DNA of 64,000 bases from the IMG/VR virus record IMGVR_UViG_3300033997_000092, positions 62,001 through 126,000 of that record; one strand, written 5' to 3'. Position 1 is the first letter of the stretch. Each line of letters opens with the position of its first letter. Shown piece by piece: positions 1-62,515 of this stretch. A program made the translations under genes and the position numbers. The notes under the pieces were generated by a model, which was not told the origin of the DNA, did no database searches, and saw only the letters and a list, made by a program, of their open reading frames with translations.

Positions 1-1061
1 TCAGACTCCTCTTCTTCCTCGTCTTCGTCTTCTTCATCACCGTCAGAAGCCTGAGCTTCTAAACGTGCCAATTCGGCATCAAGATCAAAGTCGTCTTCGT
101 CGGATGATTCAGATTCCAACTCACCGTCTTCATCTTCGTCTTCATCCAACTCCAGGCCTTCGAGGTCTTCATCATCACCATCGAGATCCAGGTCAGCGTC
201 TTCGTCGTCACCGTCTTCATCATCAGATGAAACTGAGAAAAGTTCTTCCAGTTTATCCATTTCAGCAGACAGAGAATGTAAGCAACCTGAGTCCTGTGGA
301 TCTAACAGGCCGCCGCCACATGAAGGACATACAGTCACATCAGAACTGGTACTTACGATAACATTACCGCAAGTGTCTGAATGAGAACATAAGTACAGGT
401 GGGCTTCAACTTGTTTACCATCAGAGGCTTCTGCTTGGAACGGAGTCTCTGACTCAACTTGTTCCAGGTCGTCCATACCTTCAACTGGGTCAACATTAAA
501 ATGTACCGAGTTGTGGCTAATGAAAGTACCGCTCTCTGAGGTCAGAGTAACAGTGTCTTCACCGCGACAGGCAGCAGCAAAAGAGTCACGCGCTTCTTCA
601 GCAGTAGGAGCAGCTACGATTACGATTGGCTGGTCGGTAGTACCGGCACCAGTTTCACCTTCATCAGAGCTGAGTGCTTCAATTTCAGAATCGCTTAATT
701 CAGGGATTTGGGTGCTGCACTGTGGACAATATTCTAAGTCAGAAGACTCAGAAAGTAAGTGGGCACCGCAACCATCAGCACAGATGGTGTAATTAACTGT
801 CACTTTGTCACCAACAGAGGCTAATGCTTGGAACGGCATATTACCTGTGTAAGGGGTCAAGTCATTCTGACCTGTAAGCGGGTTGTACGGCTCTGTAGCA
901 GAGGCGTGTGTCACGAAAGTGCGTTTATCGCTGTCTTGAAAAACAGCTACACTACCTTCCTGTGCATACGCTACTGCGGCAAACAGGGCCTGCGCTTCAT
1001 GTTTAGAACGACCAGCGACAACGATACCAGAGTTACCTGGTTCCTTTTTACGCTTGATCAT
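1..1061 (-). CDS. Acidic double Zn-ribbon protein, putative prohead scaffold/core protein (3' end runs off window)
   Basis: Manually translated; not in ORF track. ATG at 1061 with AAAGGAGA RBS, open to the edge: MIKRKKEPGNSGIVVAGRSKHEAQALF... Two repeats, each with Cys pairs (CADGC..CPQC; CSHSDTC..CPSC), then a D/E-rich tract. Scaffold role is inferred from composition and location. Confidence 0.7.
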   Translation of the reverse strand, partial: MIKRKKEPGNSGIVVAGRSKHEAQALFAAVAYAQEGSVAVFQDSDKRTFVTHASATEPYNPLTGQNDLTPYTGNMPFQALASVGDKVTVNYTICADGCGAHLLSESSDLEYCPQCSTQIPELSDSEIEALSSDEGETGAGTTDQPIVIVAAPTAEEARDSFAAACRGEDTVTLTSESGTFISHNSVHFNVDPVEGMDDLEQVESETPFQAEASDGKQVEAHLYLCSHSDTCGNVIVSTSSDVTVCPSCGGGLLDPQDSGCLHSLSAEMDKLEELFSVSSDDEDGDDEDADLDLDGDDEDLEGLELDEDEDEDGELESESSDEDDFDLDAELARLEAQASDGDEEDEDEEEEES

Positions 1062-1115
1062 CGGTTTCTCCTTTCGGATTGTTTAGAACACCACACAGAG
1101 TCTTCTGATTCTGCA

Positions 1116-1128
1116 TATATTAAAATTA
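1116..1128 (-). promoter_or_regulatory. Putative late promoter TAATTT-N5-T-R
   Basis: TAATTTTAATATA upstream of the scaffold-like gene; the same pattern precedes three other virion-type genes. Confidence 0.5.
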
Positions 1129-1151
1129 AGTTTCGCAGAAAAATATCTACG

Positions 1152-1192
1152 AAAATACCGGTATTTTTAGCAAATAATTTACCGGTATTTTT
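1152..1192. repeat. 16-bp palindrome AAAATACCGGTATTTT plus second copy of TACCGGTATTTTT
   Basis: Perfect palindrome at 1152-1167; 13-nt direct repeat at 1156-1168 and 1180-1192 in an AT-rich intergenic gap. Confidence 0.85.
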
Positions 1193-1226
1193 CAGCGAAT
1201 TTTCGAGACATTACAGCGTAAAATCA

Positions 1227-1697
1227 TCAGTAAGTTTCGATTGATTTGTAGAATTTTTCAAGTCCTTTTAGATTAGGAGAATATCCATGATCTCCGACCA
1301 TCTTGAAGAACTCTGCATTTTTCAAATCCTTCAAAGGATTGTTTTCGCGTAGCTCACCTTTGGGATGAATATAATCAGCGACGAACGTATCCCAATCGAC
1401 ACCATACGACCGCATTTCTTGAGCAAATATAAAGAACTTTTGCCATTGAGCTTGATCGTCTCCGTTCAGGTCAGTCAACGAATAGTGTTGAATGTCTGAA
1501 TCGGATAGTGGTTTAGGATAAACTACGATGCCGAACCTGTAGCGACTCTCAGGAAGTTTCCTTGTTATCGATTCAGGTATATCAGCAGGAGCTATAAAAC
1601 GTGAGTGACCTTTCGGCTGCGTTCCTAAGCTGAAGGGACGCAAACGCATCCCATACAGGTATTCTTTAGCTTTAGCAATACTGACTAATACGCGCAT
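1227..1697 (-). CDS. DarA C-terminal-like domain protein with leader variant
   Basis: YGMRLRPFSLGTQPKG...YRFGIVVYPKPLS...YSL resembles the DarA_C (defence against restriction A) signature; N-terminus MRVLVSIA. Confidence 0.65.
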   Translation of the reverse strand: MRVLVSIAKAKEYLYGMRLRPFSLGTQPKGHSRFIAPADIPESITRKLPESRYRFGIVVYPKPLSDSDIQHYSLTDLNGDDQAQWQKFFIFAQEMRSYGVDWDTFVADYIHPKGELRENNPLKDLKNAEFFKMVGDHGYSPNLKGLEKFYKSIETY

Positions 1698-2452
1698 TAG
1701 ATTTTATTCGCTATAGTCTTTTTGCGGGCTTTAGAGGCAGCAGCGTCTTTGATTGCTGTTTTAGGATCTGCCTTCAATGCAGCTCTGGCTTTACCTGCTT
1801 CACGTAACTTTTTACTGAAAGCCTTCAACGTACCGAAATTGATTTTAACTGCTTTACCCATAATAGAGCGCATCAGTTTAATCAAACTGTTTTTATGTTT
1901 GATAGGAACTTCTTTACCTGCTATCATTGCTTTCAGAGTATCTTTATCTTGTTTCGTTGCTTCAGGTGCTGCTTTATCTTCAGCAGCAGCTTTGGCGGCT
2001 TTCCCAGGCTTTGTCAAAATAGATGACTTAGAAGGAACTGCCTTAACTGTAACATCGGAGAGCTTCAGTTTTTTATCAGCAGGTAGTGAAAGCTTTTTGA
2101 ATTTAATGGCATCAACAATACCTTTGCGTTCGCCGACAAGTGCAGCAATTGCCTCAGCTATCTCACGGGCCTTCTCATTGTACTGGGCACGTGTGAATTT
2201 AGGTCCGATTTTCTCACGGAGTTTTTGTTTCATAGCAACCAGTTTGGCTTGCTTTTTGATAGTGTCGTTGTATGCTTTAAGTGCCGCAGCAACAACGGCT
2301 TTAGTTTTTGCGTCGGCTTGAGCTTGAACACGTGGATGTACTTTGCGTTTCGCTTTAGGCTTGATACCGCCTTTAACCATACCACTACGCATCTTAGTTT
2401 TTTGTGCTTTTGACGGTCCTGCACTCTCACTAACAAATACTTTGATTTTCAT
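1697..2452 (-). CDS. Lys/Ala-rich basic protein with MKIKVFVSESA leader (putative internal head protein)
   Basis: 251 aa, AAAGGAG RBS, very basic composition, shared leader. Confidence 0.7.
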   Translation of the reverse strand: MKIKVFVSESAGPSKAQKTKMRSGMVKGGIKPKAKRKVHPRVQAQADAKTKAVVAAALKAYNDTIKKQAKLVAMKQKLREKIGPKFTRAQYNEKAREIAEAIAALVGERKGIVDAIKFKKLSLPADKKLKLSDVTVKAVPSKSSILTKPGKAAKAAAEDKAAPEATKQDKDTLKAMIAGKEVPIKHKNSLIKLMRSIMGKAVKINFGTLKAFSKKLREAGKARAALKADPKTAIKDAAASKARKKTIANKI

Positions 2453-2476
2453 ACGAAAACTCCTTTAATATGTAGA

Positions 2477-2770
2477 TTATTTCTTGTTTGGTAAAAGGCG
2501 TAGTAATGAACGTACAGCCTCAAGCTCTGCCTTAACTGCTTGTAATTTTTTACCTTTAGGTTTTTCTTCTTCGAGAATATCGAGTAATTCATTTTCTCGG
2601 TCACTTAGCCGTACGAATCCTTTTCCTTCAAGAGAAGGGAATTTGGATAGTATAACTGCTTTCATTGATGCTTTGCGACGTTTCAACATTTCAGCATTAG
2701 TTAATGGCTTAGCTGCTATAGTTGGTTTTTTCGGAGCAGAACTTTCACTCACAAATATTTTGATTTTCAT
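2477..2770 (-). CDS. Small basic protein with MKIKIFVSESSA leader
   Basis: 97 aa, GGAG RBS, shared leader. Confidence 0.7.
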   Translation of the reverse strand: MKIKIFVSESSAPKKPTIAAKPLTNAEMLKRRKASMKAVILSKFPSLEGKGFVRLSDRENELLDILEEEKPKGKKLQAVKAELEAVRSLLRLLPNKK

Positions 2771-2783
2771 GTTATGCTCCAGT

Positions 2784-3215
2784 TCAACTAAATTTAAGAA
2801 TGTTGTTTATGTGTTCTTCGTAATTGCTGATGCCAACAATTACAAATTCTTCCAATGCGAACGCAGCTTCAGCGAAAGTTTTTACAGGTATTTCTTTGAC
2901 GAATTTCCTGTCTTCGACCAGATACGCTTTTTTGGTATCACTAATGTAAACAATAGCATTCAAAGGATAGACTATATTACCAACAAGAGATTTACCGATG
3001 TAGTATGTTCCTATGACTACTGCTTTACTTCTAATGCCTTTATTAGGACCATCAATTTGAGCCGGGTATTTATGTGCCGCAGTTACTTTGGTTGTAAATT
3101 CGTTTTTAGTATCTAGTGCTTTATCAATAGCAAACTTACGGACCATTTGCATAGCAAGTTGTATTCCTGTCTTTGAAGAACTGGAACTCTCACTCACGAA
3201 TACTTTGATTTTCAT
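2784..3215 (-). CDS. Hypothetical protein with MKIKVFVSESSS leader
   Basis: 143 aa, AGGAG RBS, shared leader. Confidence 0.7.
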   Translation of the reverse strand: MKIKVFVSESSSSSKTGIQLAMQMVRKFAIDKALDTKNEFTTKVTAAHKYPAQIDGPNKGIRSKAVVIGTYYIGKSLVGNIVYPLNAIVYISDTKKAYLVEDRKFVKEIPVKTFAEAAFALEEFVIVGISNYEEHINNILKFS

Positions 3216-3223
3216 GCAAACTC

Positions 3224-3952
3224 CTAGTCTAAATTGATAGTTGATTTAATATCAGGGTGCCAACCTTCACGACGAACCATAGCTACAGCATTTACTTCCG
3301 GGTGCCATGCGTATTCGCCTATGTCACCTGTGGTAGGATCGACGTTGTCCCACCGCAGCACTACTTGGTTACCATTAGCCTGTTTACGTACTATGTCTGC
3401 ACTGTACCTTCCAGGATTAATCTTCATCGCAGTCTTTATAGACATAGGGACTTCGATTGTCCTGACATACATTGAAGTGTTCTTACCTATAAGCATCCTT
3501 TCATGTATATAAGGTGAGCTTTCAACATAGATACGAATTGCGTAGTCCGATGCTTGATCTTTCTTGCTTAACAGCAGTTTAAAGATAGTGGCATGTGCTC
3601 CTGCTGTTTTAGGATTAAATACACGTACACCATGTTCGTTCTTACGCAAGTTCTCGACCAGCTTAGCTACGATCTTAGGCATATAGGCAGGTACACTGTG
3701 TTTTTCCACTATACGATTGTACATGGTTTCAGATACCGTGAAGCGCCAAGGAGAAGTTCCAAATAAAACAACAACACCGTATCCTTTATCATCGTTAGCT
3801 AATAAGAATGTGGAACCCTTAGATATTCCATGTACGTGTACGCTGTCTTCGATAGGAATTAGGCGTACTGCTTTGCGGAACATTAAACCGTCAAACTCGT
3901 CCGATTTACGTAATTGGACGGCGCTCTCGCTTACAAACACTTTGATTTTCAT
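3224..3952 (-). CDS. Hypothetical protein with MKIKVFVSESA leader
   Basis: 242 aa, AAGGA RBS, shared leader. Confidence 0.7.
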   Translation of the reverse strand: MKIKVFVSESAVQLRKSDEFDGLMFRKAVRLIPIEDSVHVHGISKGSTFLLANDDKGYGVVVLFGTSPWRFTVSETMYNRIVEKHSVPAYMPKIVAKLVENLRKNEHGVRVFNPKTAGAHATIFKLLLSKKDQASDYAIRIYVESSPYIHERMLIGKNTSMYVRTIEVPMSIKTAMKINPGRYSADIVRKQANGNQVVLRWDNVDPTTGDIGEYAWHPEVNAVAMVRREGWHPDIKSTINLD

Positions 3953-3962
3953 ACAAGGTTCC

Positions 3963-5018
3963 TTATTTATTCGAGGGCTTACCGTTCTTCAAATAGTTAT
4001 TCTGGAAATACTCTTGAGCTATTTCCCATCCAAGAGGAGTAACGAGTCCACGCGCAGACGTGCCGTGCACCATATACTCACAAAGAACCGCCCACGCTTC
4101 TGACGACCACGGATTGCTATATCCTGGATGTTCAAACTGGTCAGGATGCAATTCTTTATTCTCAGAATACATACGCTTGAATTTTGTTACGTCAGTTTGT
4201 TTGACAATACCTGAGTACCACATATAGTGGGCAAGTTCGTGTGTTATAGCCTGTGCCACAATCTTTGTATCTAACACACCGCCGTTAATCTGAGTAAGTT
4301 GTCCACGATTGATAATCAGGAACGACTTACTACGCATCTGGTTAGCTTGCGTTATAATACTGATCATCGTAGCATAGTCAAAACTTTCAGCTAAATACAA
4401 ACGACTTCCTTTATAAGGAACGATTGATCCAGTATGCTTTAGTGCCTCAGTTACCATATCGAGAATGTCTGGCTGTATCGGATAGATAAGGGCCGTCTTA
4501 CCTGACTTAGATCTGAATCTAGTCGGATTCGGCAGCATCTGTATTGGAATCGGAACGGACGTTTTTCCTACGATAGGGCGATTGTTAATCTTCTTTGGTA
4601 CAGATAGCTTCAATCTTTCACTTGGCGCATTGGCAGGTATTACTGATTTAGGCATAACAGGCAGCGCTGGACTATCTGCTTTATTATCCGGTGTAGCCTC
4701 AGACAACGATTCTTGTTTGATTCGTTCTGTTGTCAGTGTAGGAAGCGTCGGCATATTTGTCATAGGACGTGATTTTGCCAGAATAGATTGCAGTACATCT
4801 TCCTTTATAGGAGTAGGCACTAACTGTCCATCGAGACCTAGACAGAATGCTTTGGCCTTATACAAGGCATAGTAGATTTGTCGTGGATTAAGAGTTACTT
4901 GCCCTACTTTGATAGGCGCAGAGTCTAAATATCTGAAATAAAACATGGTTAAAGCTTCCAGAGTGTATTTGCTATAAATTACTGTTCTGTAGGCAATGGA
5001 AATGAAAACGGCTGACAA
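3963..5018 (-). CDS. Zincin-like metallopeptidase domain protein
   Basis: C-terminal ITHELAHYMW (HExxH) with downstream SEAWA third-ligand motif; Pro-rich linker; N-terminus MSAVFISIA. Confidence 0.7.
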   Translation of the reverse strand: MSAVFISIAYRTVIYSKYTLEALTMFYFRYLDSAPIKVGQVTLNPRQIYYALYKAKAFCLGLDGQLVPTPIKEDVLQSILAKSRPMTNMPTLPTLTTERIKQESLSEATPDNKADSPALPVMPKSVIPANAPSERLKLSVPKKINNRPIVGKTSVPIPIQMLPNPTRFRSKSGKTALIYPIQPDILDMVTEALKHTGSIVPYKGSRLYLAESFDYATMISIITQANQMRSKSFLIINRGQLTQINGGVLDTKIVAQAITHELAHYMWYSGIVKQTDVTKFKRMYSENKELHPDQFEHPGYSNPWSSEAWAVLCEYMVHGTSARGLVTPLGWEIAQEYFQNNYLKNGKPSNK

Positions 5019-5036
5019 AATGCCAGCCGAATCATA

Positions 5037-5933
5037 TTATGCACGTTTGGCTTTAGCAAAAGCCGATGCGTCACTTGGACTGAGTGAAACGTAAGTGTCG
5101 CCCAGTTTGACAATAACTGTAGAGCCGCCCATAACACCTTGAGCTTTAACAACTGCTTTTTCGCCAAGTGTATCAGTGAACCATTTAGCGGCGCTGTCCA
5201 GGGCTGCTTCACGGGAAGCTTTTTGGGCATCCTGAATACCGGAAATGATTTTCTGCTGGGCTGCAATAGATTTGATGTGCTGTTTGATAGCAGATTCGGC
5301 AACCATCATTTCTTTTTCAACGGCAGCCGGTAATACGCCTTTGGCATACACAGGCAGCAACAGGCGAACAGTAGCGCTAAGCTTAGAACGTAATGCAATT
5401 TTAACTGCACGACGAGCTAAGTAAGTAGTGCTTTGGCCTTTCTTGCCTGCTTGTTTTGAAGCATCAAAGTCAACAACCTTTGACTTGGCGGAAACAACAT
5501 AATACTTTTCAGGCTGAGGTTTAAGTGAGCTTGATACCAACGATGTAACTTGTTTGATAATCGCCGAAGCTGCTTTACCTACACCGTTTACAACAACAGT
5601 GATAACCAAAGTCTTTAAGTCAGGGCCAGTTTTGCGTTTCTTCGCTGTAACAGTAGGTTTAGCAGAAGCTATACCTTCAATAGCAGTGATAGCTTTGGCA
5701 ACAACACGGCCTTCTTTCAAACCTAAACCAGGAACTGTATAAACCAATTGGGTAGAAGTTTTAGCTGGCTTGACTTTTGGTTCGTGTGTAAAATCCGACG
5801 CAGCTTTTTCTATCTTTTTGGACAAAGCAGCCAGAGCAGTTTGATTAACGAAGCCGTCCTTTGCAACAACTGACGCACTCGTTGAAACCAAAGCGCCTTG
5901 CAATGGGTCCAAAGCTAATGTCACTTTCATCAT
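5037..5933 (-). CDS. Lys/Ala-rich basic protein, putative internal head protein
   Basis: Start moved to ATGATG at 5933/5930 (AGGGG RBS); MMKVTLALDPLQGALVSTSA extended leader. Confidence 0.7.
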   Translation of the reverse strand: MMKVTLALDPLQGALVSTSASVVAKDGFVNQTALAALSKKIEKAASDFTHEPKVKPAKTSTQLVYTVPGLGLKEGRVVAKAITAIEGIASAKPTVTAKKRKTGPDLKTLVITVVVNGVGKAASAIIKQVTSLVSSSLKPQPEKYYVVSAKSKVVDFDASKQAGKKGQSTTYLARRAVKIALRSKLSATVRLLLPVYAKGVLPAAVEKEMMVAESAIKQHIKSIAAQQKIISGIQDAQKASREAALDSAAKWFTDTLGEKAVVKAQGVMGGSTVIVKLGDTYVSLSPSDASAFAKAKRA

Positions 5934-5946
5934 TATTCCCCTAAGT

Positions 5947-5976
5947 AGAGAAGGGTGAGACTGATGTATCTCACCC
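5947..5976 (-). terminator. Hairpin, possible intrinsic terminator
   Basis: GGGTGAGA-8nt-TCTCACCC followed by TTCTCT (imperfect U tract). Confidence 0.5.
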
Positions 5977-5983
5977 AAACAGT

Positions 5984-6040
5984 TTAATTACCACCACCGC
6001 CACCAACACGGCAACGGCGACTATCATATACACCAGGCAT
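5984..6040 (-). CDS. Micro-ORF, 18 aa MPGVYDSRRCRVGGGGGN
   Basis: AGGAG RBS 6 nt before ATG at 6040; TAA at 5984-5986; hairpin directly downstream. Below the ORF-track size cut-off. Confidence 0.5.
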   Translation of the reverse strand: MPGVYDSRRCRVGGGGGN

Positions 6041-6135
6041 AGCCAACTCCTATAGTTGCAGTTGAATCGTTACGCTATGTAACGGAGCCCAACGCTCTCC
6101 TACAGTCTTTAACGTGGCGTAGTGTCCACGAGATA

Positions 6136-6148
6136 TGGATCACCTCCT
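6136..6148 (-). promoter_or_regulatory. Extended Shine-Dalgarno AGGAGGTGATCCA (13-nt complement of 16S rRNA 3' end)
   Basis: Plus strand TGGATCACCTCCT equals the conserved 16S 3' terminus; no ATG at normal spacing. Confidence 0.7.
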
Positions 6149-6170
6149 ACCTTGTGGAAAATTCAACAGA

Positions 6171-6947
6171 TTAGCTGTACTTCTTTTCAGCTTCTTTACT
6201 GACGAAGAACCAAGCTTTACCTTTAATCGATTGTTTGGTAATCGGATTTGTCGAAGCAAACGTCATAACGCGAGTTTTCTTTTTACCTTCAACAGCGTAA
6301 ATACTTCCAGATGACGTCAATTGAGGACGGACATTACGCGCTGCTTTCAACGAAGGCTTGACTGTCTTTTCTTCACCTGCACGTAAAGGCTTGGTGACTT
6401 CAACTGAGAAATAAATGCCTTTCTCCGCAAGCTGCATTTCTTTAGCTTTAGTTGATTGTTTTGCCGTGATAGCAGCCTGCTTATTAAGCTTACTTTGTAA
6501 AGCTTCGCGTTTAGATTGCAGCTCCGCTATTTGAGCATCAAGATCGCGGATAGATTTTCTCACATTTACGTCTTGTGCTTTTTCACCAACAGCATCACCA
6601 AAGCGTATAGCGCGTGAAGGCTTACCGTCGGTTGTTTTTGGAATAGGAGCAGCTAAGAGTTTCGCAAGCTGTGTCGGCGTAAACTTAGCTTCTTTTTTAG
6701 ATCCGACAGTTGTTTTCTCACCGCGCTGCATAACATAGGCCCACTCGGTAGAAACTGACTTAATCGAACCTGATTTAGTCAGCTCGACATCAGTTATAGT
6801 GTGTTGTATTTTACTTTTGTAGAATGGTGAGCCGCGTTTAATAAGTTGGCCTACCTTATGCTCAATTAGTTTTGCACCTATCACAATTTTCTTTGTTTGC
6901 GCAGGAGTAAACCCGGCCGATTCGCTGATCATGACATTGATTTTCAT
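6171..6947 (-). CDS. Basic protein with MKINVMISESA leader and central coiled coil
   Basis: 258 aa, AAGGA RBS, leader variant. Confidence 0.7.
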   Translation of the reverse strand: MKINVMISESAGFTPAQTKKIVIGAKLIEHKVGQLIKRGSPFYKSKIQHTITDVELTKSGSIKSVSTEWAYVMQRGEKTTVGSKKEAKFTPTQLAKLLAAPIPKTTDGKPSRAIRFGDAVGEKAQDVNVRKSIRDLDAQIAELQSKREALQSKLNKQAAITAKQSTKAKEMQLAEKGIYFSVEVTKPLRAGEEKTVKPSLKAARNVRPQLTSSGSIYAVEGKKKTRVMTFASTNPITKQSIKGKAWFFVSKEAEKKYS

Positions 6948-6963
6948 TGTTAATCCTTAAAGT

Positions 6964-7572
6964 TTATTTCAATGCAGCACTTTTAGTACCTTTTGCCGAT
7001 TTCAATGAAGCCTTCTCGCCAGTCAACAATTTCAGCAAAGCACTGGCAGACATATCCATCAATTCACGTTTACGTGATTTCGGCAAACGCTCGATAACAA
7101 CCTTCTTCAACTTACCTGCAGAAGTTACTTCGATTGAATCGATAGCATATTCATTTTTTATAAGCTGCGGAGTGGATTTATTATCTGATTTACGGACATA
7201 AGCCGACGTCATTGTGATGATAAGCTTTGTTGATTTATCCTGGAGCTTTTTACGTTGAACAGGAGTAAAGCGATCATCGGTCAATTCTGTCTTGCTAGAA
7301 CGTGCGGATTTGGATGGTTTAGATCCAGAAGAACCACGAATACCTGCTTTACGCACTAAGGTAAGTGTAACTGACATTCCTACAGTTGTCTCGCCTAATG
7401 CGCTAGTAAGTTGAGGATAATCAGTTACCTTAACATCGAACTTATCAATGTCATAGGCATCTGAATTCTTCTCAACAAGACCAGATAAAGCTTTTACGGC
7501 CTTAGCCTCAATATCTTTGTGGAGTTGGCGCTGGCCGGCAGCAGAATTTAAAGAAACTAAAACTTTCATCAC
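6964..7572 (-). CDS. Basic protein with MKVLVSLNSA leader variant
   Basis: 202 aa; C-terminal half resembles the N-terminal domain of 6171..6947. Confidence 0.7.
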   Translation of the reverse strand: MMKVLVSLNSAAGQRQLHKDIEAKAVKALSGLVEKNSDAYDIDKFDVKVTDYPQLTSALGETTVGMSVTLTLVRKAGIRGSSGSKPSKSARSSKTELTDDRFTPVQRKKLQDKSTKLIITMTSAYVRKSDNKSTPQLIKNEYAIDSIEVTSAGKLKKVVIERLPKSRKRELMDMSASALLKLLTGEKASLKSAKGTKSAALK

Positions 7573-8367
7573 CTACCTCGCCTTCATTATTTGGGAATGT
7601 AAGTGTTGGTTACTTACATAAGCTGGATTGTCCACATGGCTACACTCAAAGCCAGTCGCATCATGGCAACGGCGATACACTAACAAGTCCTGCAACGAGT
7701 AAGGGCGTTTACCCAGTCGAGTATGCTGACAGAAGTGTAATGTATCTTGGGTAGTCACATGGCCACAGAAGCTACAGGTGTATGAAGTGTAATAGAAGCC
7801 AACACTGTGAGTATTCACTTTGTCGGTCAGAATTTCATTACACAGTTTGCTGTCACGCGAACGGTCGTAACCAAGTAACATCATAAGCTTAGCATGTTTA
7901 CCATGAAATCCAGGAAGAGCTTTAACATAACTGTCAAAGATAATACCTTTTGCTTTGGTATAGTCTTTGTTGTCATGTTCTTTGTGTGTAGGTTTGCCTT
8001 TGAATGTTTTATACATCGGCATACCATAACGCGGTTTGAAATCTAGTAATTCCCGCACACTCAAGCTATCGCCGTTTGTGTTAGGAATGTCTGTTATCAG
8101 TGCTGGAACAGGAACCAATATGTAGTCACGTATATCAGGACTGATGTTGTACTTCTCAGCCGCAGAAGGAAGCCATGCGTTAATATCAAGCACGACTCCT
8201 TCACCACCGCCGACCATACTCGGTTTGACCTGAATCTCTTTTGAAGTACGAGAGAACTGGTTTAGCTCTACAGCTTTACCTTCTCCGGCACTACGGTCAT
8301 AAAAACTGCTGATGTCAAATGCAGGAGCAAACAAATCACCATCAGCACTACGAGGAAAGTTCTGCAT
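7573..8367 (-). CDS. Putative prohead maturation protease (HK97/assemblin-like fold, Cys/His insertion)
   Basis: PNTNGDS...TFKGKPTHKEH...GIIFD...SVG....CSFCG..CQH...FECSHVDNPA follows the H...SxG...ExSxVxxPA pattern of HK97-type prohead proteases. Confidence 0.7.
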   Translation of the reverse strand: MQNFPRSADGDLFAPAFDISSFYDRSAGEGKAVELNQFSRTSKEIQVKPSMVGGGEGVVLDINAWLPSAAEKYNISPDIRDYILVPVPALITDIPNTNGDSLSVRELLDFKPRYGMPMYKTFKGKPTHKEHDNKDYTKAKGIIFDSYVKALPGFHGKHAKLMMLLGYDRSRDSKLCNEILTDKVNTHSVGFYYTSYTCSFCGHVTTQDTLHFCQHTRLGKRPYSLQDLLVYRRCHDATGFECSHVDNPAYVSNQHLHSQIMKAR

Positions 8368-8369
8368 AA

Positions 8370-8876
8370 TTAGTCCGCCGTTAAATATACCTGACGTTCA
8401 GTAAGGCGCTGACGCTCTGTACGTAAACGGTTGTTAGGAGTATGGTAATTGCCATCAGTGTCTTGTATAAGAGCACCAATATCACGACCACGATATGACT
8501 GCGGGAAGTTATCACGTAAAGCGCACAGGAAATTGTAGAAGCGCTCCACTTCCGACTTCTTCTTGCCTATCCGTGCAAGGAAACGGACTTCAGGCTGCAG
8601 GTTCTCTAACAGCGTGACGATTGCCTGGTAGATATATTGGTGCTGCTGTTCATCAGGACGAGTAACGAAGCGCTCTACAGCAACTTTAAGGTAGTTTACG
8701 TCATTGTTTAAACGGCCAAACACCGTAGACCGTACGTTGTTATTGTATGCACCCGTAGTAGCAAGAATGTCCATGCACTGCTGCACACGCTGGCTTACCA
8801 AGTCCGCAAGCTGAGAATAAGGCATCACTGCGTCCTCAGTCACTACACGTGGATTGATTGTTATTTGGCATTTCAT
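8370..8876 (-). CDS. Hypothetical helical protein
   Basis: 168 aa, tightly packed between neighbours. Confidence 0.65.
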   Translation of the reverse strand: MKCQITINPRVVTEDAVMPYSQLADLVSQRVQQCMDILATTGAYNNNVRSTVFGRLNNDVNYLKVAVERFVTRPDEQQHQYIYQAIVTLLENLQPEVRFLARIGKKKSEVERFYNFLCALRDNFPQSYRGRDIGALIQDTDGNYHTPNNRLRTERQRLTERQVYLTAD

Positions 8877-10204
8877 AAGAATTTCTTCTCCACATTAGCC
8901 CGTACCCAAGAACAACATTCATTGAAAGTCATAGGGACAGGATGTATTAATTGGACACCAGATTCACGAACTAACGTGTATGGCTGATTTTCTATTCTAC
9001 CACTGTGGAAAGCAGATTCATCGAAACCATCACGCAGCAATATATGCCAAGCACGACGATTGAATCCGCCTTTATTGCCGTTAGTGTCAAGTGTGCCGAT
9101 AATACGGTCATTAAAACGTATATCGTATCTTGTACGCTGTGCAAGAGGCAGACGAGCCATAGTTGAATTTACTTTGAATGACAGGCGAGGTCTAACAGCG
9201 GATTCAGACACCATTTCATCTGATTCAACATCGTCACTTTCTTCGTCACCAGTTTCTTCTTCGTTTTCTTGTTGAGCAGCAGCAAGCACTTCATCCAAAT
9301 CTTCTTGGCTGTACTGAGAAGTATCTGGCTTCCAGCCTTCTTCTTGCATTTGATAGATTGCTTGGAAACGAGCAACACGCTCTGCAATGCCATCAAGGTC
9401 TTGGTTACCTGCCCACAAAACGAATTCATCAAGCATAACACTGACTGGGTCATTTTCAGTATCGTTAGATTCTGATACCATGTCGGGATCTGCTACTTCA
9501 TCCAACTGTCCAGTGCCTTCAAGGGCCTCTGAAGGATTTTTGTAACCGAAGAACGCTCCGGCTAACGCACCAGCAACAGGAGCAAGTCCAGCAGCAACAG
9601 CTCCGACAGCAGCAGTACCAAGAAGCGTTTTAGTTGCATAGAAGGTTATCTTGTGTGCCAGATACTTACCACGCTGGTGTTCTTCTGTTACACGGTCTTC
9701 TTTCTTAGCATCGATATAATTGCCTAAAGCTTTTATGTTCTCTGGGCTAAGGCGCTGGCTGATATATTCAGTGGCACCACGTATATTATTTGCTAAAGCT
9801 AAAACGCCTTTGGCCAGACGGCTCTTGACATCAGGCAGCATAGATTCTGCGCGACGGTCTTCTTCCTTTCTGGCCAGCTTTTCATTTATTACTGCAATGA
9901 GGCCGCCGGATATAGGCAAGCCTCCAGTTGACTTACGTTGAATCTTTTTGTCGCGTTTATCCAGAGGAACCTTGTCACGATATTGTTTATTCAGGTCCTC
10001 AAAAGAAACACTCTTGCCTGAACCTGACGGCTTATCGTCATCTTCTTCAGGCTCACCAGAAGCTCCTGGAGGCTTTTGGTAAAGCTTCATCCTAGAGCGT
10101 TTATGTCGCGCTAAGTATGCTTGTTGCTCTTTATACGATTTGCGTCTCCACCACGCAGGAACATCTTCTTGCGATAAGGAGACAAGATCAAGAGTTATTC
10201 GCAT
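8873..10204 (-). CDS. Multi-segment protein with leader, Gly/Ala hydrophobic hairpin and acidic tracts
   Basis: Start moved to ATG 10204 (MRITLDLVSLSQ); contains LLGTAAVGAVAAGLAPVAGALAGAFFG and two internal MVSES motifs. Confidence 0.7.
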   Translation of the reverse strand: MRITLDLVSLSQEDVPAWWRRKSYKEQQAYLARHKRSRMKLYQKPPGASGEPEEDDDKPSGSGKSVSFEDLNKQYRDKVPLDKRDKKIQRKSTGGLPISGGLIAVINEKLARKEEDRRAESMLPDVKSRLAKGVLALANNIRGATEYISQRLSPENIKALGNYIDAKKEDRVTEEHQRGKYLAHKITFYATKTLLGTAAVGAVAAGLAPVAGALAGAFFGYKNPSEALEGTGQLDEVADPDMVSESNDTENDPVSVMLDEFVLWAGNQDLDGIAERVARFQAIYQMQEEGWKPDTSQYSQEDLDEVLAAAQQENEEETGDEESDDVESDEMVSESAVRPRLSFKVNSTMARLPLAQRTRYDIRFNDRIIGTLDTNGNKGGFNRRAWHILLRDGFDESAFHSGRIENQPYTLVRESGVQLIHPVPMTFNECCSWVRANVEKKFL

Positions 10205-11318
10205 TTTGAATGTTTTCCTGTTTACGCAGTTCTTCCAAGAAAAACTCAAGATTCTGCTTTAAACGAGGCTCAGCAGGGTTTTTGCTGTAGGCATGATGTG
10301 CATACTTTAAGGACTCTGCCTTATAGCCAGCATACCACATACACTCGCTCATTAAATCGTGGGCTTTCCACAGGTCGATACATGGGTCTTTGAATAAGAT
10401 TAAATTATTCTCCTCCACGCTAAACAAGACGTACAACTGACCGATAGCAGCAAAATAGTTCTTGCTGTCACGATAGAAAAGGGCCAGGTCAAAGTACAAG
10501 TCCTTGAAGTTTGGATTTAGTGCCAGCGCAGCGTGGAGATAACGTATGTCGGTTGAGCAATAGAACATTGTACGATATACTTCGACCTGTTGAGCATCAA
10601 AGTAACCATGGTCAGCATCAACAGCAGTAGCTAATACATCCAATGCCTCAGAGTATTGACCAGCGTAAAACAGTTCACGGCCATAGTAAAAGACACAACG
10701 GTGATCTTTGGGATCGGCAGTGTAATCTTCCTGCAGCAAGTGCATGTACTTACGTTCTTTGGATTCGTCTTTGTGGTGAAGAAGATTCAACCCAGTTGTA
10801 ACACTCACAACAGATACATTAGCAGACAGAACCTCATGGACCGAGTAACGCCATTCAAAGCCTTCACGACTATGGCCTTTAAGTTGGTTATAGCTTGTTA
10901 CTACATTACCATTTACATCGCACAGGTTCATGGTAGCATATAGAGCGAAGTCGGGAGAGTACGTAGGTGATTGCTTGAATTTCTCCAGTGAGCTATCTAA
11001 CAACTCTCTCCAGTCTTGCTCATAGAACCGTTCGTCCATATCCAAGAATACAAATGCGTCGGCATCTGTCGTAGTTTTGGCATAGTGCATTGCATAATTA
11101 CGGGCAACATTAAAGCGGAACGGCTTGAAGATAGCTTGAACAATTTCAAACTTGTCTTCAAGCCCAAGTAAGGTAGCCTGTTCTACAAACAAATCTATTG
11201 TATTGTCTTCACTTCCAGTGTCAACAACTCTTATATAATCGGCATGTTTGGCACACTCTAAAAATGTGCGTACATTGAATGATTCGTTTTTGCAGATGGC
11301 ATATAGCGCAACTTTCAT
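10188..11318 (-). CDS. Family 2 glycosyltransferase with C-terminal TPR repeats
   Basis: AICKNE, VVDTGSEDNT, FNVARN, LDMDE (DxD), VHE motifs; TPR-like FYYGRELFYAGQYSEA. Confidence 0.9.
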   Translation of the reverse strand: MKVALYAICKNESFNVRTFLECAKHADYIRVVDTGSEDNTIDLFVEQATLLGLEDKFEIVQAIFKPFRFNVARNYAMHYAKTTTDADAFVFLDMDERFYEQDWRELLDSSLEKFKQSPTYSPDFALYATMNLCDVNGNVVTSYNQLKGHSREGFEWRYSVHEVLSANVSVVSVTTGLNLLHHKDESKERKYMHLLQEDYTADPKDHRCVFYYGRELFYAGQYSEALDVLATAVDADHGYFDAQQVEVYRTMFYCSTDIRYLHAALALNPNFKDLYFDLALFYRDSKNYFAAIGQLYVLFSVEENNLILFKDPCIDLWKAHDLMSECMWYAGYKAESLKYAHHAYSKNPAEPRLKQNLEFFLEELRKQENIQNANNS

Positions 11319-49973: not shown

Positions 49974-50373
49974 GTTTTCTCCATGAGTCACCCCAACCAG
50001 ACTTACTGGATGAAGAAGCGTTTCCTTTCATCGAGCGTAGACCTGCTGCACCACGTTGATGCACTTTGCCTATTACCTTTGAATGGCAATCCGAACAAAG
50101 CGTTGTCAAATTGCTTAGGATATTTTTACCTCCCTTAGCAATCGCTATTATGTGGTGTACAGTCAAAACTACATCTGTTGGGTTGGACGGATGGTTGTGG
50201 TTACCGCATTTCTGACAACAATAGTTATCTCGTTTAAGTACAATTGGACGTAATCTGGCGAATTCGTCTCCACGCAGATCATTGTCCTTTTTATTTATAG
50301 TGCCACGTAATCTCTGTTGGGTAGATGGTCTGCCACCGAACTTGTTTTTCTTTCCCAGCTTAGCGAGTCCCAT
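49966..50373 (-). CDS. HNH endonuclease
   Basis: VLKRDNYCCQKCG...VHHIIAIAKGGKNILSNLTTLCSDCH. Confidence 0.92.
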   Translation of the reverse strand: MGLAKLGKKNKFGGRPSTQQRLRGTINKKDNDLRGDEFARLRPIVLKRDNYCCQKCGNHNHPSNPTDVVLTVHHIIAIAKGGKNILSNLTTLCSDCHSKVIGKVHQRGAAGLRSMKGNASSSSKSGWGDSWRKHE

Positions 50374-50376
50374 ACG

Positions 50377-51087
50377 TTACCCCACAAGAATCATGCGTGT
50401 GTTTTCAAGGCTAGTTTTGTAAGCCAAGTCAGCTTCTATACCAGCAGTTGAACCTTGAGACCTGATATATCGCTCTAATGAATCCGCGACTTCAGGTGTG
50501 AATGTTTTACGTGAGTGGTCGATTACACCACGAACCAAGTTCATAAGTATCTGAGCAAAAGTCATACTCAATGGACGAAGTACGTTTATATCAATTTGGT
50601 CGATATACTCACCCACATCCTGCAATGCCTTCATATCAGCAATTACTTCCCGCAAGGATTCGTATGTCTTGAGTAAAGGGTAGATGTCTTTACTTGAATG
50701 CGAATCACGGTACTTCTTCATGGCCTCACGGGATATGTACACAAGGCTATCGAACATAGCTGTGTATTCATCGATGTGTTCGCGGTTCTTATCAAATGCG
50801 GAATCTTGCAAGCGTTCGATTTGGGCACGACCAGCTTGAATCAATTGCTGTGCTTGTACATCCATATTATCCCGTGTTACTTTAGCAGGCAATGTGTCTG
50901 TTTTCTTTTTCTTTTTCTTAACGACTTTTCTAACTGGAGGACTGTCTTTCACTGCTTTAGATTTCTTTGCAGGTTCAACGGTCTTTGCTTTAGGCTTAAC
51001 TGTTTTTGTGTCAGGTGTAGGCGCTGACTTTAGTTTTTTCTTAGCAGGCTTCTTTTTTGTGAAGTCCGATATTTCTCTTGCTGCCAT
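50377..51087 (-). CDS. Hypothetical protein with Lys-rich N-terminus and helical C-terminal domain
   Basis: 236 aa, AGGGG RBS. Confidence 0.65.
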   Translation of the reverse strand: MAAREISDFTKKKPAKKKLKSAPTPDTKTVKPKAKTVEPAKKSKAVKDSPPVRKVVKKKKKKTDTLPAKVTRDNMDVQAQQLIQAGRAQIERLQDSAFDKNREHIDEYTAMFDSLVYISREAMKKYRDSHSSKDIYPLLKTYESLREVIADMKALQDVGEYIDQIDINVLRPLSMTFAQILMNLVRGVIDHSRKTFTPEVADSLERYIRSQGSTAGIEADLAYKTSLENTRMILVG

Positions 51088-51104
51088 AAAAACCCCTGGA
51101 AATG

Positions 51105-51130
51105 AAAAAGGGAGACCCTTAGGCCTCCCT
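51105..51130 (-). terminator. Intrinsic terminator
   Basis: AGGGAGGCC-TAAG-GGTCTCCCT followed by TTTT. Confidence 0.85.
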
Positions 51131-51138
51131 CGTTGGTT

Positions 51139-51954
51139 TTACGCGAAAGAATGGCCGCGGATTATTGCTTCCAGCTTACCGAAGTAAGTAGGATTGAAGC
51201 CATAGACTTTCTGCCAGAATGTTAACAGGTCTTGGGCCAGGTTACTGCTGGACAGAGAAGCGAGTTCATCTGGAACAACAAGTTCAACGCCTTCGACTTT
51301 TGTTGTGCCGATAGTTACACCATCGATCAACTGGTCGCGGCCAATCGCATCAACATTGTCATTACCAGCAACTACATACAGTGTTTCGTTTTCGTTTTCG
51401 TCGATAACAGAGGCCGCAGCCACACCAAAACGCAGTTCGCCGCCTTGTACATAAGAGACATAATCGCCAGACTGGATGTTGTCGATAGTCTCAGCAGTGC
51501 GTGATAGCGACTGGAAGTAATGGTTGTCAGAACCAACACGTACAGTCGAGCAGCAGGCTTTCATCAATTCCTGAATTTCAGCAGGATTGTCAACGCCGTT
51601 AGCACGGACCAGGAAGTTGCCGTCTTCGCTCTGACGCAGAGACCACAGATTGTCTTCGTCGTCACGGTACATATTACGGCTAACGCTTACCATACCGTCA
51701 ATGTTACCTGACTGAGGAACAGGGATCGCATCGCGTGTAGGAGTAACGTGACCCACTAACAATGTGCGGATAGGGCTCATGTCGATAGTACGGAACGAAC
51801 CAGCAACAGCAATCATTTTGTTTTTAAACGCATTACGCACGCCAGTATGTACATGCTCAGCGCTTACTTTTTCAGTTACACCGTGAGTTACTGAAACTAC
51901 AACACGGGCGCCGCCAGGAATACCAGTGGCTTGAGTTATCTTAGTGTTGATCAT
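51139..51954 (-). CDS. Putative abundant virion structural protein
   Basis: 271 aa from ATG 51954 (GGAG RBS); has its own promoter-like motif and terminator. Confidence 0.6.
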   Translation of the reverse strand: MINTKITQATGIPGGARVVVSVTHGVTEKVSAEHVHTGVRNAFKNKMIAVAGSFRTIDMSPIRTLLVGHVTPTRDAIPVPQSGNIDGMVSVSRNMYRDDEDNLWSLRQSEDGNFLVRANGVDNPAEIQELMKACCSTVRVGSDNHYFQSLSRTAETIDNIQSGDYVSYVQGGELRFGVAAASVIDENENETLYVVAGNDNVDAIGRDQLIDGVTIGTTKVEGVELVVPDELASLSSSNLAQDLLTFWQKVYGFNPTYFGKLEAIIRGHSFA

Positions 51955-51979
51955 CGATCTTCTCCAAAAAGTGTTTACA

Positions 51980-51992
51980 CATGAATAAATTA
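51980..51992 (-). promoter_or_regulatory. Putative late promoter TAATTT-N5-T-R
   Basis: TAATTTATTCATG; overlaps the upstream TAA stop codon. Confidence 0.4.
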
Positions 51993-53165: not shown

Positions 53166-53175
53166 CTTTCTTTCC

Positions 53176-55598: not shown

Positions 55599-55616
55599 GA
55601 TTGGGTCCTAGAAAAC

Positions 55617-55647
55617 AAAAAAGGGCCAGTAGTTAGCTGGCCCTTTT
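55617..55647. terminator. Intrinsic terminator
   Basis: AAAAGGGCCAG-TAGTTAG-CTGGCCCTTTT; U7 tract on the minus strand. Confidence 0.88.
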
Positions 55648-55702
55648 AGGGATAATAACTACAATTCACTTGCAGTTAAATTATCAAATCGGCTGACTAA
55701 TA

Positions 55703-56410: not shown

Positions 56411-56483
56411 GATGGGCTCTCCTAAACAAGTGACAATTGAACTTTAGTCTGCCTCTCCAGATGAAGTCCTCTCACAAACTTCA

Positions 56484-56496
56484 TACTAAAAAATTA
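56484..56496 (-). promoter_or_regulatory. Putative late promoter TAATTT-N5-T-R
   Basis: TAATTTTTTAGTA, overlapped by palindrome ATTACTATAGTAAT (56493-56506) and followed by an ATGAAGT/ACTTCAT hairpin. Confidence 0.55.
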
Positions 56497-56524
56497 CTAT
56501 AGTAATCGTAGCAAATAAAAAATT

Positions 56525-57577: not shown

Positions 57578-57585
57578 AGAGGTCC

Positions 57586-57861
57586 TCAAACAAAAACAAT
57601 ACAGGAGATCAGTTCATCAATAGCTTGTTGTTTAATCCTAGATGGAACTTTGATGTCAGGACGTTTTATAGTAGCAAGACATTCCGTAGCAGGATCCCAC
57701 TGTGCGACATTCTGCCACTTACCATCAACAAGTTTACGAAGACGATAGGAGACCAGTGTCATTTCAACACGGTCTCCGTAACGAAGTAAGCAGAACTCAA
57801 ACATCCGCTCTTTAGTTTTCTTCTTCGACAGTTCTTTGATTACTATTGTCATTTGAATCAA
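57586..57861 (-). CDS. Small hypothetical protein
   Basis: About 90 aa, fills the gap; start uncertain. Confidence 0.55.
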   Translation of the reverse strand: MIQMTIVIKELSKKKTKERMFEFCLLRYGDRVEMTLVSYRLRKLVDGKWQNVAQWDPATECLATIKRPDIKVPSRIKQQAIDELISCIVFV

Positions 57862-60123: not shown

Positions 60124-60128
60124 GCAAT

Positions 60129-62513: not shown

Positions 62514-62515
62514 CG

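What the first reader, a model, noticed from the sequence alone, without database searches (positions are those of the whole stretch)
1..1061. Unlisted scaffold-like gene with about 10 copies of the same [S/A]-x-[S/A]-[S/A/G] motif and a duplicated Zn ribbon
Seen: in about 353 aa the protein contains ALAS, SESS, ALSS, SESG, AEAS, STSS, SLSA, SVSS, SESS and AQAS. These fall at equivalent positions in its two repeats (PFQALAS/PFQAEAS; LLSESS/IVSTSS; EALSS/HSLSA) and punctuate the acidic tail. Known: scaffold/core proteins are cut at many sites by the prohead protease. Inference: this independently supports the leader motif being the protease site. An acidic Zn-ribbon scaffold could also recruit the basic cargo electrostatically.
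Basis: partly seen in the sequence, partly recalled or inferred. Interest (0 to 1): 0.62.

Follow-up and report, generated by a model that had tools for sequence, protein, structure and literature searches.

The report
Multi-cut zinc-ribbon scaffold of jumbo phage
The window's first gene is the front half of a 700-residue, very acidic jumbo-phage head-assembly (scaffold-like) protein carrying about 20 copies of a small-x-small motif that is most likely where the phage's own head protease cuts it up; this is a new variant of a known mechanism, not yet shown experimentally.

Summary
The ORF runs off the window: the full protein has 700 aa. It consists of two homologous Zn-ribbon domains, a 165-aa polyacidic linker and a conserved helical C-terminal domain.

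- **Motif count.** It occurs 22 times in the full protein, against 7.7. All the excess is in same-type forms, AxA or SxS followed by S/A/G (17 vs 4). Mixed forms are at chance.
- **Standing in the genome.** The protein is the strongest motif outlier of the 261-kb phage genome.
- **Family.** 119 homologues on jumbo-phage contigs (PaBG, Lu11 and Erwinia/Dickeya Alexandravirus relatives) share the architecture and the motif excess, with lineage-specific flavours.
- **Other motif sites.** The motif ends the 10-residue leaders of neighbouring basic proteins. It marks one or two conserved places in the capsid protein's N-terminal 60-85 residues. It also lies 7-32 residues before the C-terminus in every homologue.
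- **Gene order.** Protease, leader proteins, this gene, a virion protein, then the major capsid gene.

Best reading: a T4 gp22-like scaffold/core protein dismantled by the prohead protease. Cleavage itself, zinc binding and capsid binding are untested. The database label 'ATPase' has no support.

The parts
1..1061 (-). N-terminal 353 codons of the 700-aa scaffold-like gene. The ORF continues 1041 bases beyond the window start; the full ORF is L001:10959-13061 (minus strand).
   Evidence: phrog_20988 E = 6e-92; 120+ homologues
687..1040 (-). Repeat domain 1 (residues 8-125): beta-alpha-beta-beta unit plus Zn ribbon
   Evidence: BLASTP self-alignment E = 1e-17; AlphaFold2 model, mean pLDDT 87.8
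717..782 (-). Zn ribbon 1: C94, C98, C112 and C115 (C-x3-C ... C-P-x-C), all invariant in 48 homologues
   Evidence: weak Pfam Zn-ribbon hits, below cut-off
288..635 (-). Repeat domain 2 (residues 143-258)
318..389 (-). Zn ribbon 2: C225, C231, C245 and C248
   Evidence: Atlas structural match of residues 172-258 to a double zinc-ribbon cluster, TM 0.55 by the matched row
3..287 (-). Start of the polyacidic linker (residues 259-424, 55% D+E, net charge -90). It contains diverged copies of a 60-nt repeat unit, three of which encode GELESESS.
1697..2452 (-). Basic protein (251 aa, pI 10.5) with the 10-residue leader MKIKVFVSES followed by A
2477..2770 (-). Basic protein (97 aa) with the leader MKIKIFVSES followed by S
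2784..3215 (-). Protein (143 aa) with the leader MKIKVFVSES followed by S
3224..3952 (-). Protein (242 aa) with the leader MKIKVFVSES followed by A
6171..6947 (-). Basic protein (258 aa) with the leader MKINVMISES followed by A
6964..7572 (-). Basic protein (202 aa) with the looser leader MMKVLVSLNSAAG
7573..8367 (-). Prohead (head maturation) protease, 264 aa. His131 and Ser188 (NTxSxG) are invariant, followed by a conserved Cys/His cluster.
   Evidence: phrog_18299 E = 1.4e-86; Atlas 'prohead core protein protease' clusters; alignment of 18 proteases
8873..10249 (-). 458-aa head-module protein with two MVSES sites (MVSESN and MVSESA)

Best explanation
This is the prohead scaffold/core protein of a PaBG/Lu11-like jumbo phage, the functional counterpart of T4 gp22.

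**Proposed mechanism (inferred).**
1. The conserved C-terminal helical domain, with its short basic C-terminal tail, attaches the protein to the inside of the assembling capsid shell.
2. The 165-residue polyacidic linker and the two Zn-ribbon domains fill the interior. There they may help hold the very basic, leader-tagged internal proteins encoded just upstream.
3. Once the shell is closed, the phage's serine prohead protease (window 7573-8367) cuts after the third residue of sites of the form hydrophobic-x-[A/S]-x-[A/S] followed by S/A/G.
4. These cuts remove the 10-residue leaders, trim about 60-85 residues from the capsid protein, detach the scaffold's C-terminal tail, and chop the scaffold into pieces that leave or stay as small peptides. 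This makes room for DNA.

**Shown here:** the architecture, the motif excess and its distribution, synteny, and family-wide conservation.

**Inferred:** cleavage, the exact scissile bond, zinc binding, capsid binding and cargo recruitment.
For: **Position**
- The gene order is protease, leader proteins, this gene, a 230-aa virion protein, then the major capsid protein, followed by tail sheath and tube.
- The trio of this gene, a ~235-aa gene and the capsid gene is kept in 41 of 41 related loci and in PaBG (gp082-081-080) and Dickeya AD1.

**Motif**
- 17 same-type sites against 4.0 expected. This is the top outlier of 313 ORFs in the genome, z = 7.3.
- Across 119 homologues there are 1933 sites against 608 expected. 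Mixed forms run 702 against 587. 113 of 119 homologues have z > 3. F/I/M/L are enriched at P5.

**Link to the protease**
- The same motif ends five near-identical N-terminal leaders next to the protease gene.
- It occurs twice in the 458-aa head protein.
- In 26 capsid proteins it is concentrated in the N-terminal 100 alignment columns (42 vs 14 expected), at three columns. The rest of the capsid protein has 18 against 24 expected.
- PaBG capsid protein loses about 20% of its mass on maturation. gp80 and gp81 run as several bands, while the text names no gp82 (PMC7412058).

**Covariation**
- Lu11-like lineages have scaffolds with 17-22 AxA and no SxS, and leaders ending ALAA.
- This phage and loci L004, L005 and L011 are SxS-rich and have S-type leaders. 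Spearman 0.57, p = 0.001, n = 29.

**Release site**
- Every one of 119 homologues has a motif 7-32 residues from the C-terminus, followed by a basic tail.
- 91% have it within two alignment columns of the same position.

**Physical character**
- pI 4.1, net charge -127.
- The C-terminal domain is modelled with a 48-residue helix and helical bundles, pLDDT 82.6.

**Protease**
- His131 and Ser188 are invariant, in the His-then-Ser order. From memory, the spacing resembles that of T4 gp21 and HK97 gp4.
- Atlas neighbours are 'prohead core protein protease' clusters.
Against: - No experiment shows cleavage, presence in proheads or absence from virions. The PaBG proteome listed only 14 abundant proteins, so gp82's absence is weak evidence.
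- There is no sequence or fold similarity to any known scaffolding protein.
- The complex prediction of capsid protein with the C-terminal domain gave no answer.
- Some motif positions lie in confidently folded strands or helices (the Zn-ribbon strand; the AALATA helix at residue 562). There conservation may be structural and the site inaccessible.
- The covariation test is not corrected for shared ancestry; only about four independent lineages contribute. L044 is a partial exception: an AxA-only scaffold with one S-type leader.
- Folded Zn-ribbon domains are unusual for a scaffold.
Confidence: 0.68

Rival explanations
1. It is an internal head or ejection protein (cargo) rather than a scaffold. 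It would be packaged, trimmed by the protease at some of the sites, retained in the mature head and perhaps injected. The Zn-ribbon domains would then act on host or phage nucleic acid.
For: - It has two well-folded, conserved Zn-ribbon domains.
- The neighbouring genes encode probable internal proteins. The 156-aa neighbour hits a PHROG described as 'released from the phage upon host infection'.
- Giant phages such as phiKZ and SPN3US package many processed proteins (PMC5694885 and PMC10052503, listed).
Against: - It has no N-terminal leader like those of the neighbouring cargo proteins.
- It is extremely acidic, whereas those proteins are basic.
- It has about 20 sites spread over its whole length, including one before the C-terminal tail in all homologues.
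- Its place just ahead of the capsid gene is universal.
- It is not among the virion proteins named in the PaBG text.
Confidence: 0.17
2. The motif is a compositional or structural habit of an Ala/Ser-rich protein family (small-x-small packing motifs in helices and strands) and has nothing to do with proteolysis. The protein's role is then open.
For: - Several conserved motif positions lie in confidently modelled secondary structure, for example the AALATA helix and the Zn-ribbon strands.
- Small-x-small patterns are common in helix packing (general knowledge).
Against: - Mixed AxS/SxA forms, which would pack as well, are at chance, while AxA/SxS are about 3-fold enriched.
- The sites also need a hydrophobic residue at P5 and S/A/G after them.
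- Many sites lie in the disordered acidic linker.
- The same extended motif ends unrelated proteins' leaders and marks the capsid propeptide, with matching flavour per lineage.
Confidence: 0.08
3. It is an ATPase, or a ribosomal-protein-like factor, as homologues are labelled in RefSeq/PHROGs ('ATPase') and in GenBank PaBG ('60S ribosomal-like protein L2-A').
For: Only the database labels.
Against: - It has no Walker A motif and no Pfam ATPase domain.
- No ATPase fold appears in either model.
- PDB profile hits are only to acidic low-complexity stretches of unrelated proteins. That probably explains the ribosomal label.
Confidence: 0.02

Closest known systems
T4 gp22 prohead core scaffold protein, with gp21 protease and the capsid-targeting leaders of the internal proteins IPI-III (from general knowledge)
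   Same: - The gene order is protease, then scaffold, then major capsid gene.
- The scaffold is acidic and helical and carries many protease sites.
- Short (about 10-residue) N-terminal leaders on basic internal proteins end in the protease site.
- The capsid protein loses an N-terminal piece.
   Different: - No detectable sequence or fold similarity.
- The protein has 700 aa, against about 270 for gp22.
- It has two Zn-ribbon domains and a 165-aa polyacidic linker.
- The motif is small-x-small followed by S/A/G, not (L/I)-x-Glu.
- A virion protein gene lies between the scaffold and capsid genes.
Herpesvirus scaffold protein (pre-VP22a/UL26.5) and assemblin, with maturational (M) site cleavage at Ala|Ser about 25 residues from the C-terminus (from general knowledge)
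   Same: - There is a conserved site with a small residue before and Ser after the presumed cut.
- It lies 7-32 residues from the scaffold's C-terminus, ahead of a tail that could hold the capsid protein.
- The protease belongs to the same broad class of capsid-maturation serine proteases.
   Different: - Here there are about 20 sites rather than one or two.
- The protease is a separate gene, not fused to the scaffold.
- There is no sequence similarity.
- Binding of the tail to the capsid protein is not shown (one search gave no answer).
phiKZ gp175 and SPN3US gp245 prohead proteases and their many processed head proteins (PMC5694885, PMC10052503, PMC7411985, listed)
   Same: These are jumbo myophages in which one protease trims many head and internal proteins at a short consensus motif, removing N-terminal propeptides.
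   Different: - Their motifs end in Glu ((S/A/G)-x-E; A-x-E).
- The capsid proteins and scaffold candidates are unrelated in sequence.
- This clade's motif was not found in the papers searched.
PaBG gp082 / phrog_20988 family ('ATPase', 'hypothetical protein') in Baikalvirus, Lu11, Alexandravirus and related Erwinia/Dickeya phages
   Same: - True homologues: 36% identity to PaBG gp082 and a PHROG hit at E = 6e-92.
- They share the architecture and the synteny.
   Different: This phage's copy uses mostly S-E-S and A-x-A sites and has a longer linker. No function has been assigned to the family apart from a label that the sequence does not support.

Membership tests
phrog_20988 / PaBG gp082-like family | Significant profile match over the N-terminal domains and the C-terminal domain | tested here: met
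   phrog_20988 E = 6.3e-92; 129 homologues at E <= 1e-3; BFVD fold hits only to family members, including PaBG S5WKA5
phrog_20988 / PaBG gp082-like family | Architecture: two or more Zn-ribbon repeats, an acidic linker and a conserved C-terminal domain; location two genes upstream of the major capsid gene | tested here: met
Phage scaffold / prohead core proteins (functional class, e.g. T4 gp22) | Encoded in the head module beside the protease and major capsid genes | tested here: met
Phage scaffold / prohead core proteins (functional class, e.g. T4 gp22) | Present in proheads, removed (by proteolysis or exit) before or during DNA packaging, absent as an intact protein from virions | not testable with these tools
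   The only hint is indirect: the text of the PaBG virion proteome names gp80 and gp81 but not gp82.
Phage scaffold / prohead core proteins (functional class, e.g. T4 gp22) | Carries cleavage sites of the phage's prohead protease | tested here: inconclusive
   A strong, specific excess of a motif shared with leaders and capsid propeptides. That the motif is the cleavage site is inferred, not observed.
Phage scaffold / prohead core proteins (functional class, e.g. T4 gp22) | Binds the major capsid protein | tested here: inconclusive
   Complex prediction of the capsid protein with residues 425-700 gave no verdict.
Phage scaffold / prohead core proteins (functional class, e.g. T4 gp22) | Sequence or fold homology to a characterised scaffold (T4 gp22, P22 gp8, phi29 gp7, HK97 delta domain) | tested here: not met
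   No Pfam hit, no PDB sequence hit and no fold hit beyond generic long helices.
Zinc-ribbon domains | Two Cys pairs (knuckles) on a small beta structure, conserved in relatives | tested here: met
   C94/C98/C112/C115 and C225/C245/C248 are invariant. Beta strands flank the knuckles in the model. The Atlas match to a double zinc-ribbon cluster has TM 0.55 by the matched row. Pfam Zn-ribbon hits are below cut-off. Metal binding itself is untested.
P-loop or other ATPases (database label of homologues) | Walker A/B motifs or an ATPase fold | tested here: not met
   No Walker A pattern, no Pfam ATPase domain and no ATPase fold match.

The most novel reading that the evidence does not exclude
A whole clade of jumbo phages (PaBG, Lu11, Alexandravirus and many uncultured relatives) uses a prohead protease with signal-peptidase/assemblin-like 'small-x-small | small' specificity, rather than the Glu-specific cutting of T4 and phiKZ. 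Its scaffold is a new kind of modular protein in three parts.
- Zn-ribbon domains dock the beta-strand leaders of basic cargo proteins.
- A DNA-like polyacidic linker neutralises that cargo.
- A C-terminal tail, released by a herpesvirus-like M-site cut, holds the shell.

Together this would be a cargo-loading scaffold that is swapped for DNA.
Probability: 0.25. Interest if true: 0.75.

Novelty: new variant of a known kind. Interest (0 to 1): 0.58.

Why it matters
- **A predicted cleavage rule.** If right, this gives the PaBG/Lu11/Alexandravirus group of jumbo phages its missing scaffold gene and a predicted cleavage rule for its head protease. Mature ends of head and internal proteins could then be predicted from sequence, for more than a hundred isolate and metagenomic genomes.
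- **An annotation fix.** It corrects a propagated 'ATPase' annotation.
- **A new scaffold design.** The scaffold's make-up is unlike known scaffolds: duplicated zinc ribbons, a 165-residue polyacidic spacer, and a cleavable basic tail. It offers a testable model for how highly basic internal proteins are loaded into a large capsid and then exchanged for DNA.
- **A comparative link.** A phage protease preferring Ala/Ser before Ser/Ala/Gly would bring phage maturation closer to the herpesvirus assemblin system.

Tried and rejected
- **Megablast** of window 1-6000 against GenBank phages found no match.
- **Pfam** gave only sub-threshold Zn-ribbon hits for the protein, and nothing for the capsid protein or the protease.
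- **PDB sequence searches** of the protease and of the family profile gave only chance or acidic low-complexity hits.
- **Fold searches of the N-terminal model.** Foldseek against the PDB found nothing at E <= 0.001. VIA-align wide gave a best Z of 4.1, to MCM Zn-ribbon regions. The Atlas gave weak rows only.
- **Fold searches of the C-terminal model.** Foldseek against the PDB found nothing. VIA-align gave only generic long-helix matches, Z <= 6.6. BFVD returned only family members. I therefore do not claim a known fold, nor that the fold is new.
- **Complex prediction** of the capsid protein with scaffold residues 425-700 gave no verdict (score 0.00). This is not evidence either way.
- **The search for related loci** with the scaffold alignment failed for lack of a conserved stretch. 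The capsid alignment was used instead.
- **Plain SES as the motif:** across the genome it is only mildly above expectation (36 vs 24.8). The informative unit is the extended same-type motif.
- **Leaders as Sec signal peptides cut by host signal peptidase:** rejected, because they have only 10 residues and about three hydrophobic positions, and the substrates are cytoplasmic head proteins (reasoning from general knowledge).
- **Literature searches** found no description of this clade's scaffold or cleavage motif. The Dickeya AD1 paper holds no virion proteome.
- **Not used:** reads tools and the large representative search, because the family was already well populated.

Full report
**Where the window lies.** The window is bases 62001-126000 of a single 261,032-bp contig. 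By protein similarity the contig is a jumbo myophage related to Pseudomonas phages PaBG and Lu11, phage NCTB, and the Erwinia/Dickeya Alexandravirus group. The capsid protein is 44-51% identical to theirs, and the protein under study is 29-36% identical. No near-identical GenBank phage was found. IMG/VR holds 100% identical fragments (L006 and L007).

**The observation.** It is open at the window edge. With the flanking DNA (L001 = contig 50001-63200) the complete ORF is L001:10959-13061, 700 aa.
It occurs 22 times in the whole protein, against 7.7 (p < 2e-4). This holds with both global and 50-aa block shuffles.
- The excess is entirely in 'same-type' sites, A-x-A or S-x-S followed by S/A/G (17 vs 4.0). 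Mixed A-x-S and S-x-A sites are at chance (5 vs 3.8).
- All 17 same-type sites have a hydrophobic, Ala or Tyr residue two positions before the motif.
- Three sites (GELESESS) sit in diverged copies of a repeated 60-nt acidic module and are not independent. This does not change the conclusion.
- Among 313 crude ORFs of the genome this protein is the top outlier, z = 7.3.

**Anatomy.**
- Residues 5-130 and 140-262 are homologous: 35% identity, E = 1e-17. PFQALAS aligns with PFQAEAS, and LLSESS with IVSTSS.
- Each repeat ends in a four-Cys ribbon. C94, C98, C112, C115, C225, C245 and C248 are invariant in 48 homologues.
- AlphaFold2 models residues 1-258 with mean pLDDT 87.8, as two compact beta-alpha-beta-beta plus ribbon domains joined by a disordered stretch.
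- Residues 259-424 are 55% Asp+Glu, net charge -90.
- Residues 425-700 are the most conserved part. They model at pLDDT 82.6 as a three-stranded sheet, short helices, a 48-residue helix and further helices. A disordered stretch and a last short helix follow.
- The whole protein has net charge -127 and pI 4.1.
- Neither model has a convincing counterpart in the PDB, BFVD or the Atlas beyond the protein's own family, a small zinc-ribbon match and generic long helices.
- There is no Walker A motif and no Pfam ATPase domain.

**Surroundings.** All genes are on the minus strand. In order of transcription they are:
- a 458-aa protein with two MVSES sites;
- a 168-aa protein;
- the head maturation protease (phrog_18299, E = 1.4e-86);
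- about nine mostly basic proteins. Five begin with the nearly identical ten residues MKIKVFVSES followed by A or S, and two have looser versions;
- the 700-aa protein;
- a 230-aa virion structural protein (phrog_16710);
- the 370-aa major head protein (phrog_2522, E = 9e-87);
- three small genes, then tail sheath and tube.

The protease family keeps His131 and Ser188 (in NTxSxG) invariant, in the His-then-Ser order. From memory, the order and spacing resemble those of the T4 gp21 and HK97 gp4 serine proteases. Its nearest Atlas clusters are 'prohead core protein protease'.

**The family.** A word-based search returned 129 homologues of 470-860 aa, many on contigs of 200-330 kb.
- They share the architecture: CxxC near residues 110 and 243, sometimes a third repeat; an acidic region; and the C-terminal domain.
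- Same-type motifs number 1933 against 608 expected over 119 homologues, while mixed forms number 702 against 587. 113 of 119 homologues have z > 3.
- F, I, M and L are enriched at P5, and S, G and A after the motif.
- The flavour is lineage-specific. Lu11-like phages use ATAS/AVAS/ALAS, some uncultured lineages use SLSA/SLSG, Erwinia phages use DFDSESS, and this phage uses a mix.

**Link to proteolysis.** There are four lines of evidence.
1. *Leaders.* The ten-residue leaders of neighbouring proteins end in the motif. In related loci the leader has the same flavour as the scaffold. Scaffolds with 17-22 AxA and no SxS go with leaders ending ALAA. SxS-rich scaffolds go with SVSA, SESA and STSA leaders. 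The rank correlation of scaffold flavour with the flavour in the other ORFs of each locus is 0.57, p = 0.001, n = 29. It is not corrected for shared ancestry; about four independent lineages contribute, and L044 is a partial exception.
2. *Capsid protein.* In 26 capsid proteins the motif is concentrated in the N-terminal 100 alignment columns (42 vs 14 expected), at three columns. The remaining 280 residues have 18 against 24 expected. This phage has ALAS at residues 62-65, and a weaker S-M-S-N about 20 residues later. Lu11-like phages have lost the first site and keep ATAS at the second.
3. *PaBG experiment.* The mature capsid protein of PaBG is reported to be about 20% lighter than predicted, and gp80 and gp81 run as several bands (PMC7412058). 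That fits a cut 60-85 residues in.
4. *C-terminal site.* Every homologue has a site 7-32 residues from its C-terminus, followed by a short basic tail. 91% have it within two alignment columns of the same position.

**Interpretation.** The gene's place, its charge, its long helices, its many sites and the pre-C-terminal site match what is known of scaffold or core proteins that are destroyed by the prohead protease. From general knowledge, T4 gp22 with gp21 is the closest functional model, including the ten-residue capsid-targeting leaders of the T4 internal proteins. The herpesvirus scaffold, cut at Ala|Ser about 25 residues from its C-terminus to release the capsid protein, is the closest model for the terminal site.

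I therefore read the protein as the scaffold/core protein of this phage group. I read the motif hydrophobic-x-[A/S]-x-[A/S], followed by S/A/G, as the protease's recognition site. The cut is most likely after the second small residue; this placement rests on analogy and on the leader layout only.

It has no further support.

**Caveats.**
- Nothing here shows cleavage, zinc binding or capsid binding.
- The one complex prediction gave no verdict.
- Some conserved motif positions are inside confidently folded elements and may be structural: the ribbon strand, where SDS/SxS is kept even in AxA lineages, and the AALATA helix.
- A role as a processed internal protein that stays in the head cannot be excluded.
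- The labels 'ATPase' and '60S ribosomal-like protein L2-A' borne by homologues have no support in the sequence. PDB profile hits are only to acidic low-complexity stretches of unrelated proteins, which probably explains the ribosomal label.

**Novelty and literature.** Multi-site processing of a scaffold by a prohead protease is a known kind of system. This family's architecture and the small-x-small motif were not found in the papers searched. I rate it a new variant of a known kind.

Noticed in passing
window 1697-7572 (minus strand): A block of about nine genes lies between the protease and the scaffold-like gene. Most encode lysine-rich proteins (pI 9.4-10.5). Five have the near-identical 10-residue leader MKIKVFVSES followed by A or S, and two have looser leaders (MMKVLVSLNSAAG; MMKVTLALD...LVSTSAS). 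They look like T4-type leader-targeted internal head proteins.
   Followed up: partly
window 3963-5018 (minus strand): This 351-aa protein carries an HExxH motif (HELAH) near its C-terminus and hits phrog_37079. A similar HEFAH-containing C-terminus ends a 1412-aa protein at the same place in locus L005, and PaBG has a SprT-like protein nearby. It may be a packaged metallopeptidase.
   Followed up: no
window 1227-1697 (minus strand): This 156-aa protein, directly upstream of the scaffold-like gene, matches part of phrog_1926, described as 'released from the phage upon host infection' (E = 3e-7). It begins MRVLVSIAK, a degenerate leader.
   Followed up: no
window 7573-8367 (minus strand): The prohead protease has a conserved Cys/His cluster (Y.C..C ... 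C.H ... YR.C) immediately after the presumed catalytic Ser188. It may be a zinc-binding insertion, which I do not recall in T4 gp21 or HK97 gp4. The protease of this head module may therefore also bind zinc.
   Followed up: partly
window 8873-10249 (minus strand): This 458-aa protein upstream of the protease has two MVSES sites flanking acidic stretches, and a hydrophobic Gly/Ala-rich segment. It is probably another protease substrate of the head. Only its C-terminus matches PHROGs, which are of unknown function.
   Followed up: no
L001:8713-9015 (minus strand), just outside the window: This 100-aa acidic protein lies right after the capsid gene and has ALAA near its N-terminus. Its counterparts in L005 (147 aa, five SxS sites plus an acidic tail) and L003 (178 aa, AVAS and two ATAS) also carry lineage-matched motifs. 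It may be a second small protease-processed head-assembly protein.
   Followed up: partly
contig 181052-182860 (plus strand), outside the window: This 602-aa protein has six same-type motifs, all with a hydrophobic residue at P5 (including FVSESN), against 1.4 expected. It is a further candidate protease substrate far from the head module.
   Followed up: no
window 10188-11318 (minus strand): A beta-1,4-glycosyltransferase-like gene (phrog_13126, E = 6e-65) sits inside the head gene block. A 'putative glycosyl transferase' lies at the same place in Dickeya phage AD1.
   Followed up: no
PaBG NC_022096 gp082, RefSeq Erwinia phage homologues (L002:14001-15932): Homologues are annotated 'ATPase' (RefSeq, PHROG) or '60S ribosomal-like protein L2-A' (GenBank PaBG). 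Neither label is supported by motifs, Pfam or predicted fold. The labels seem to stem from the acidic low-complexity linker.
   Followed up: yes
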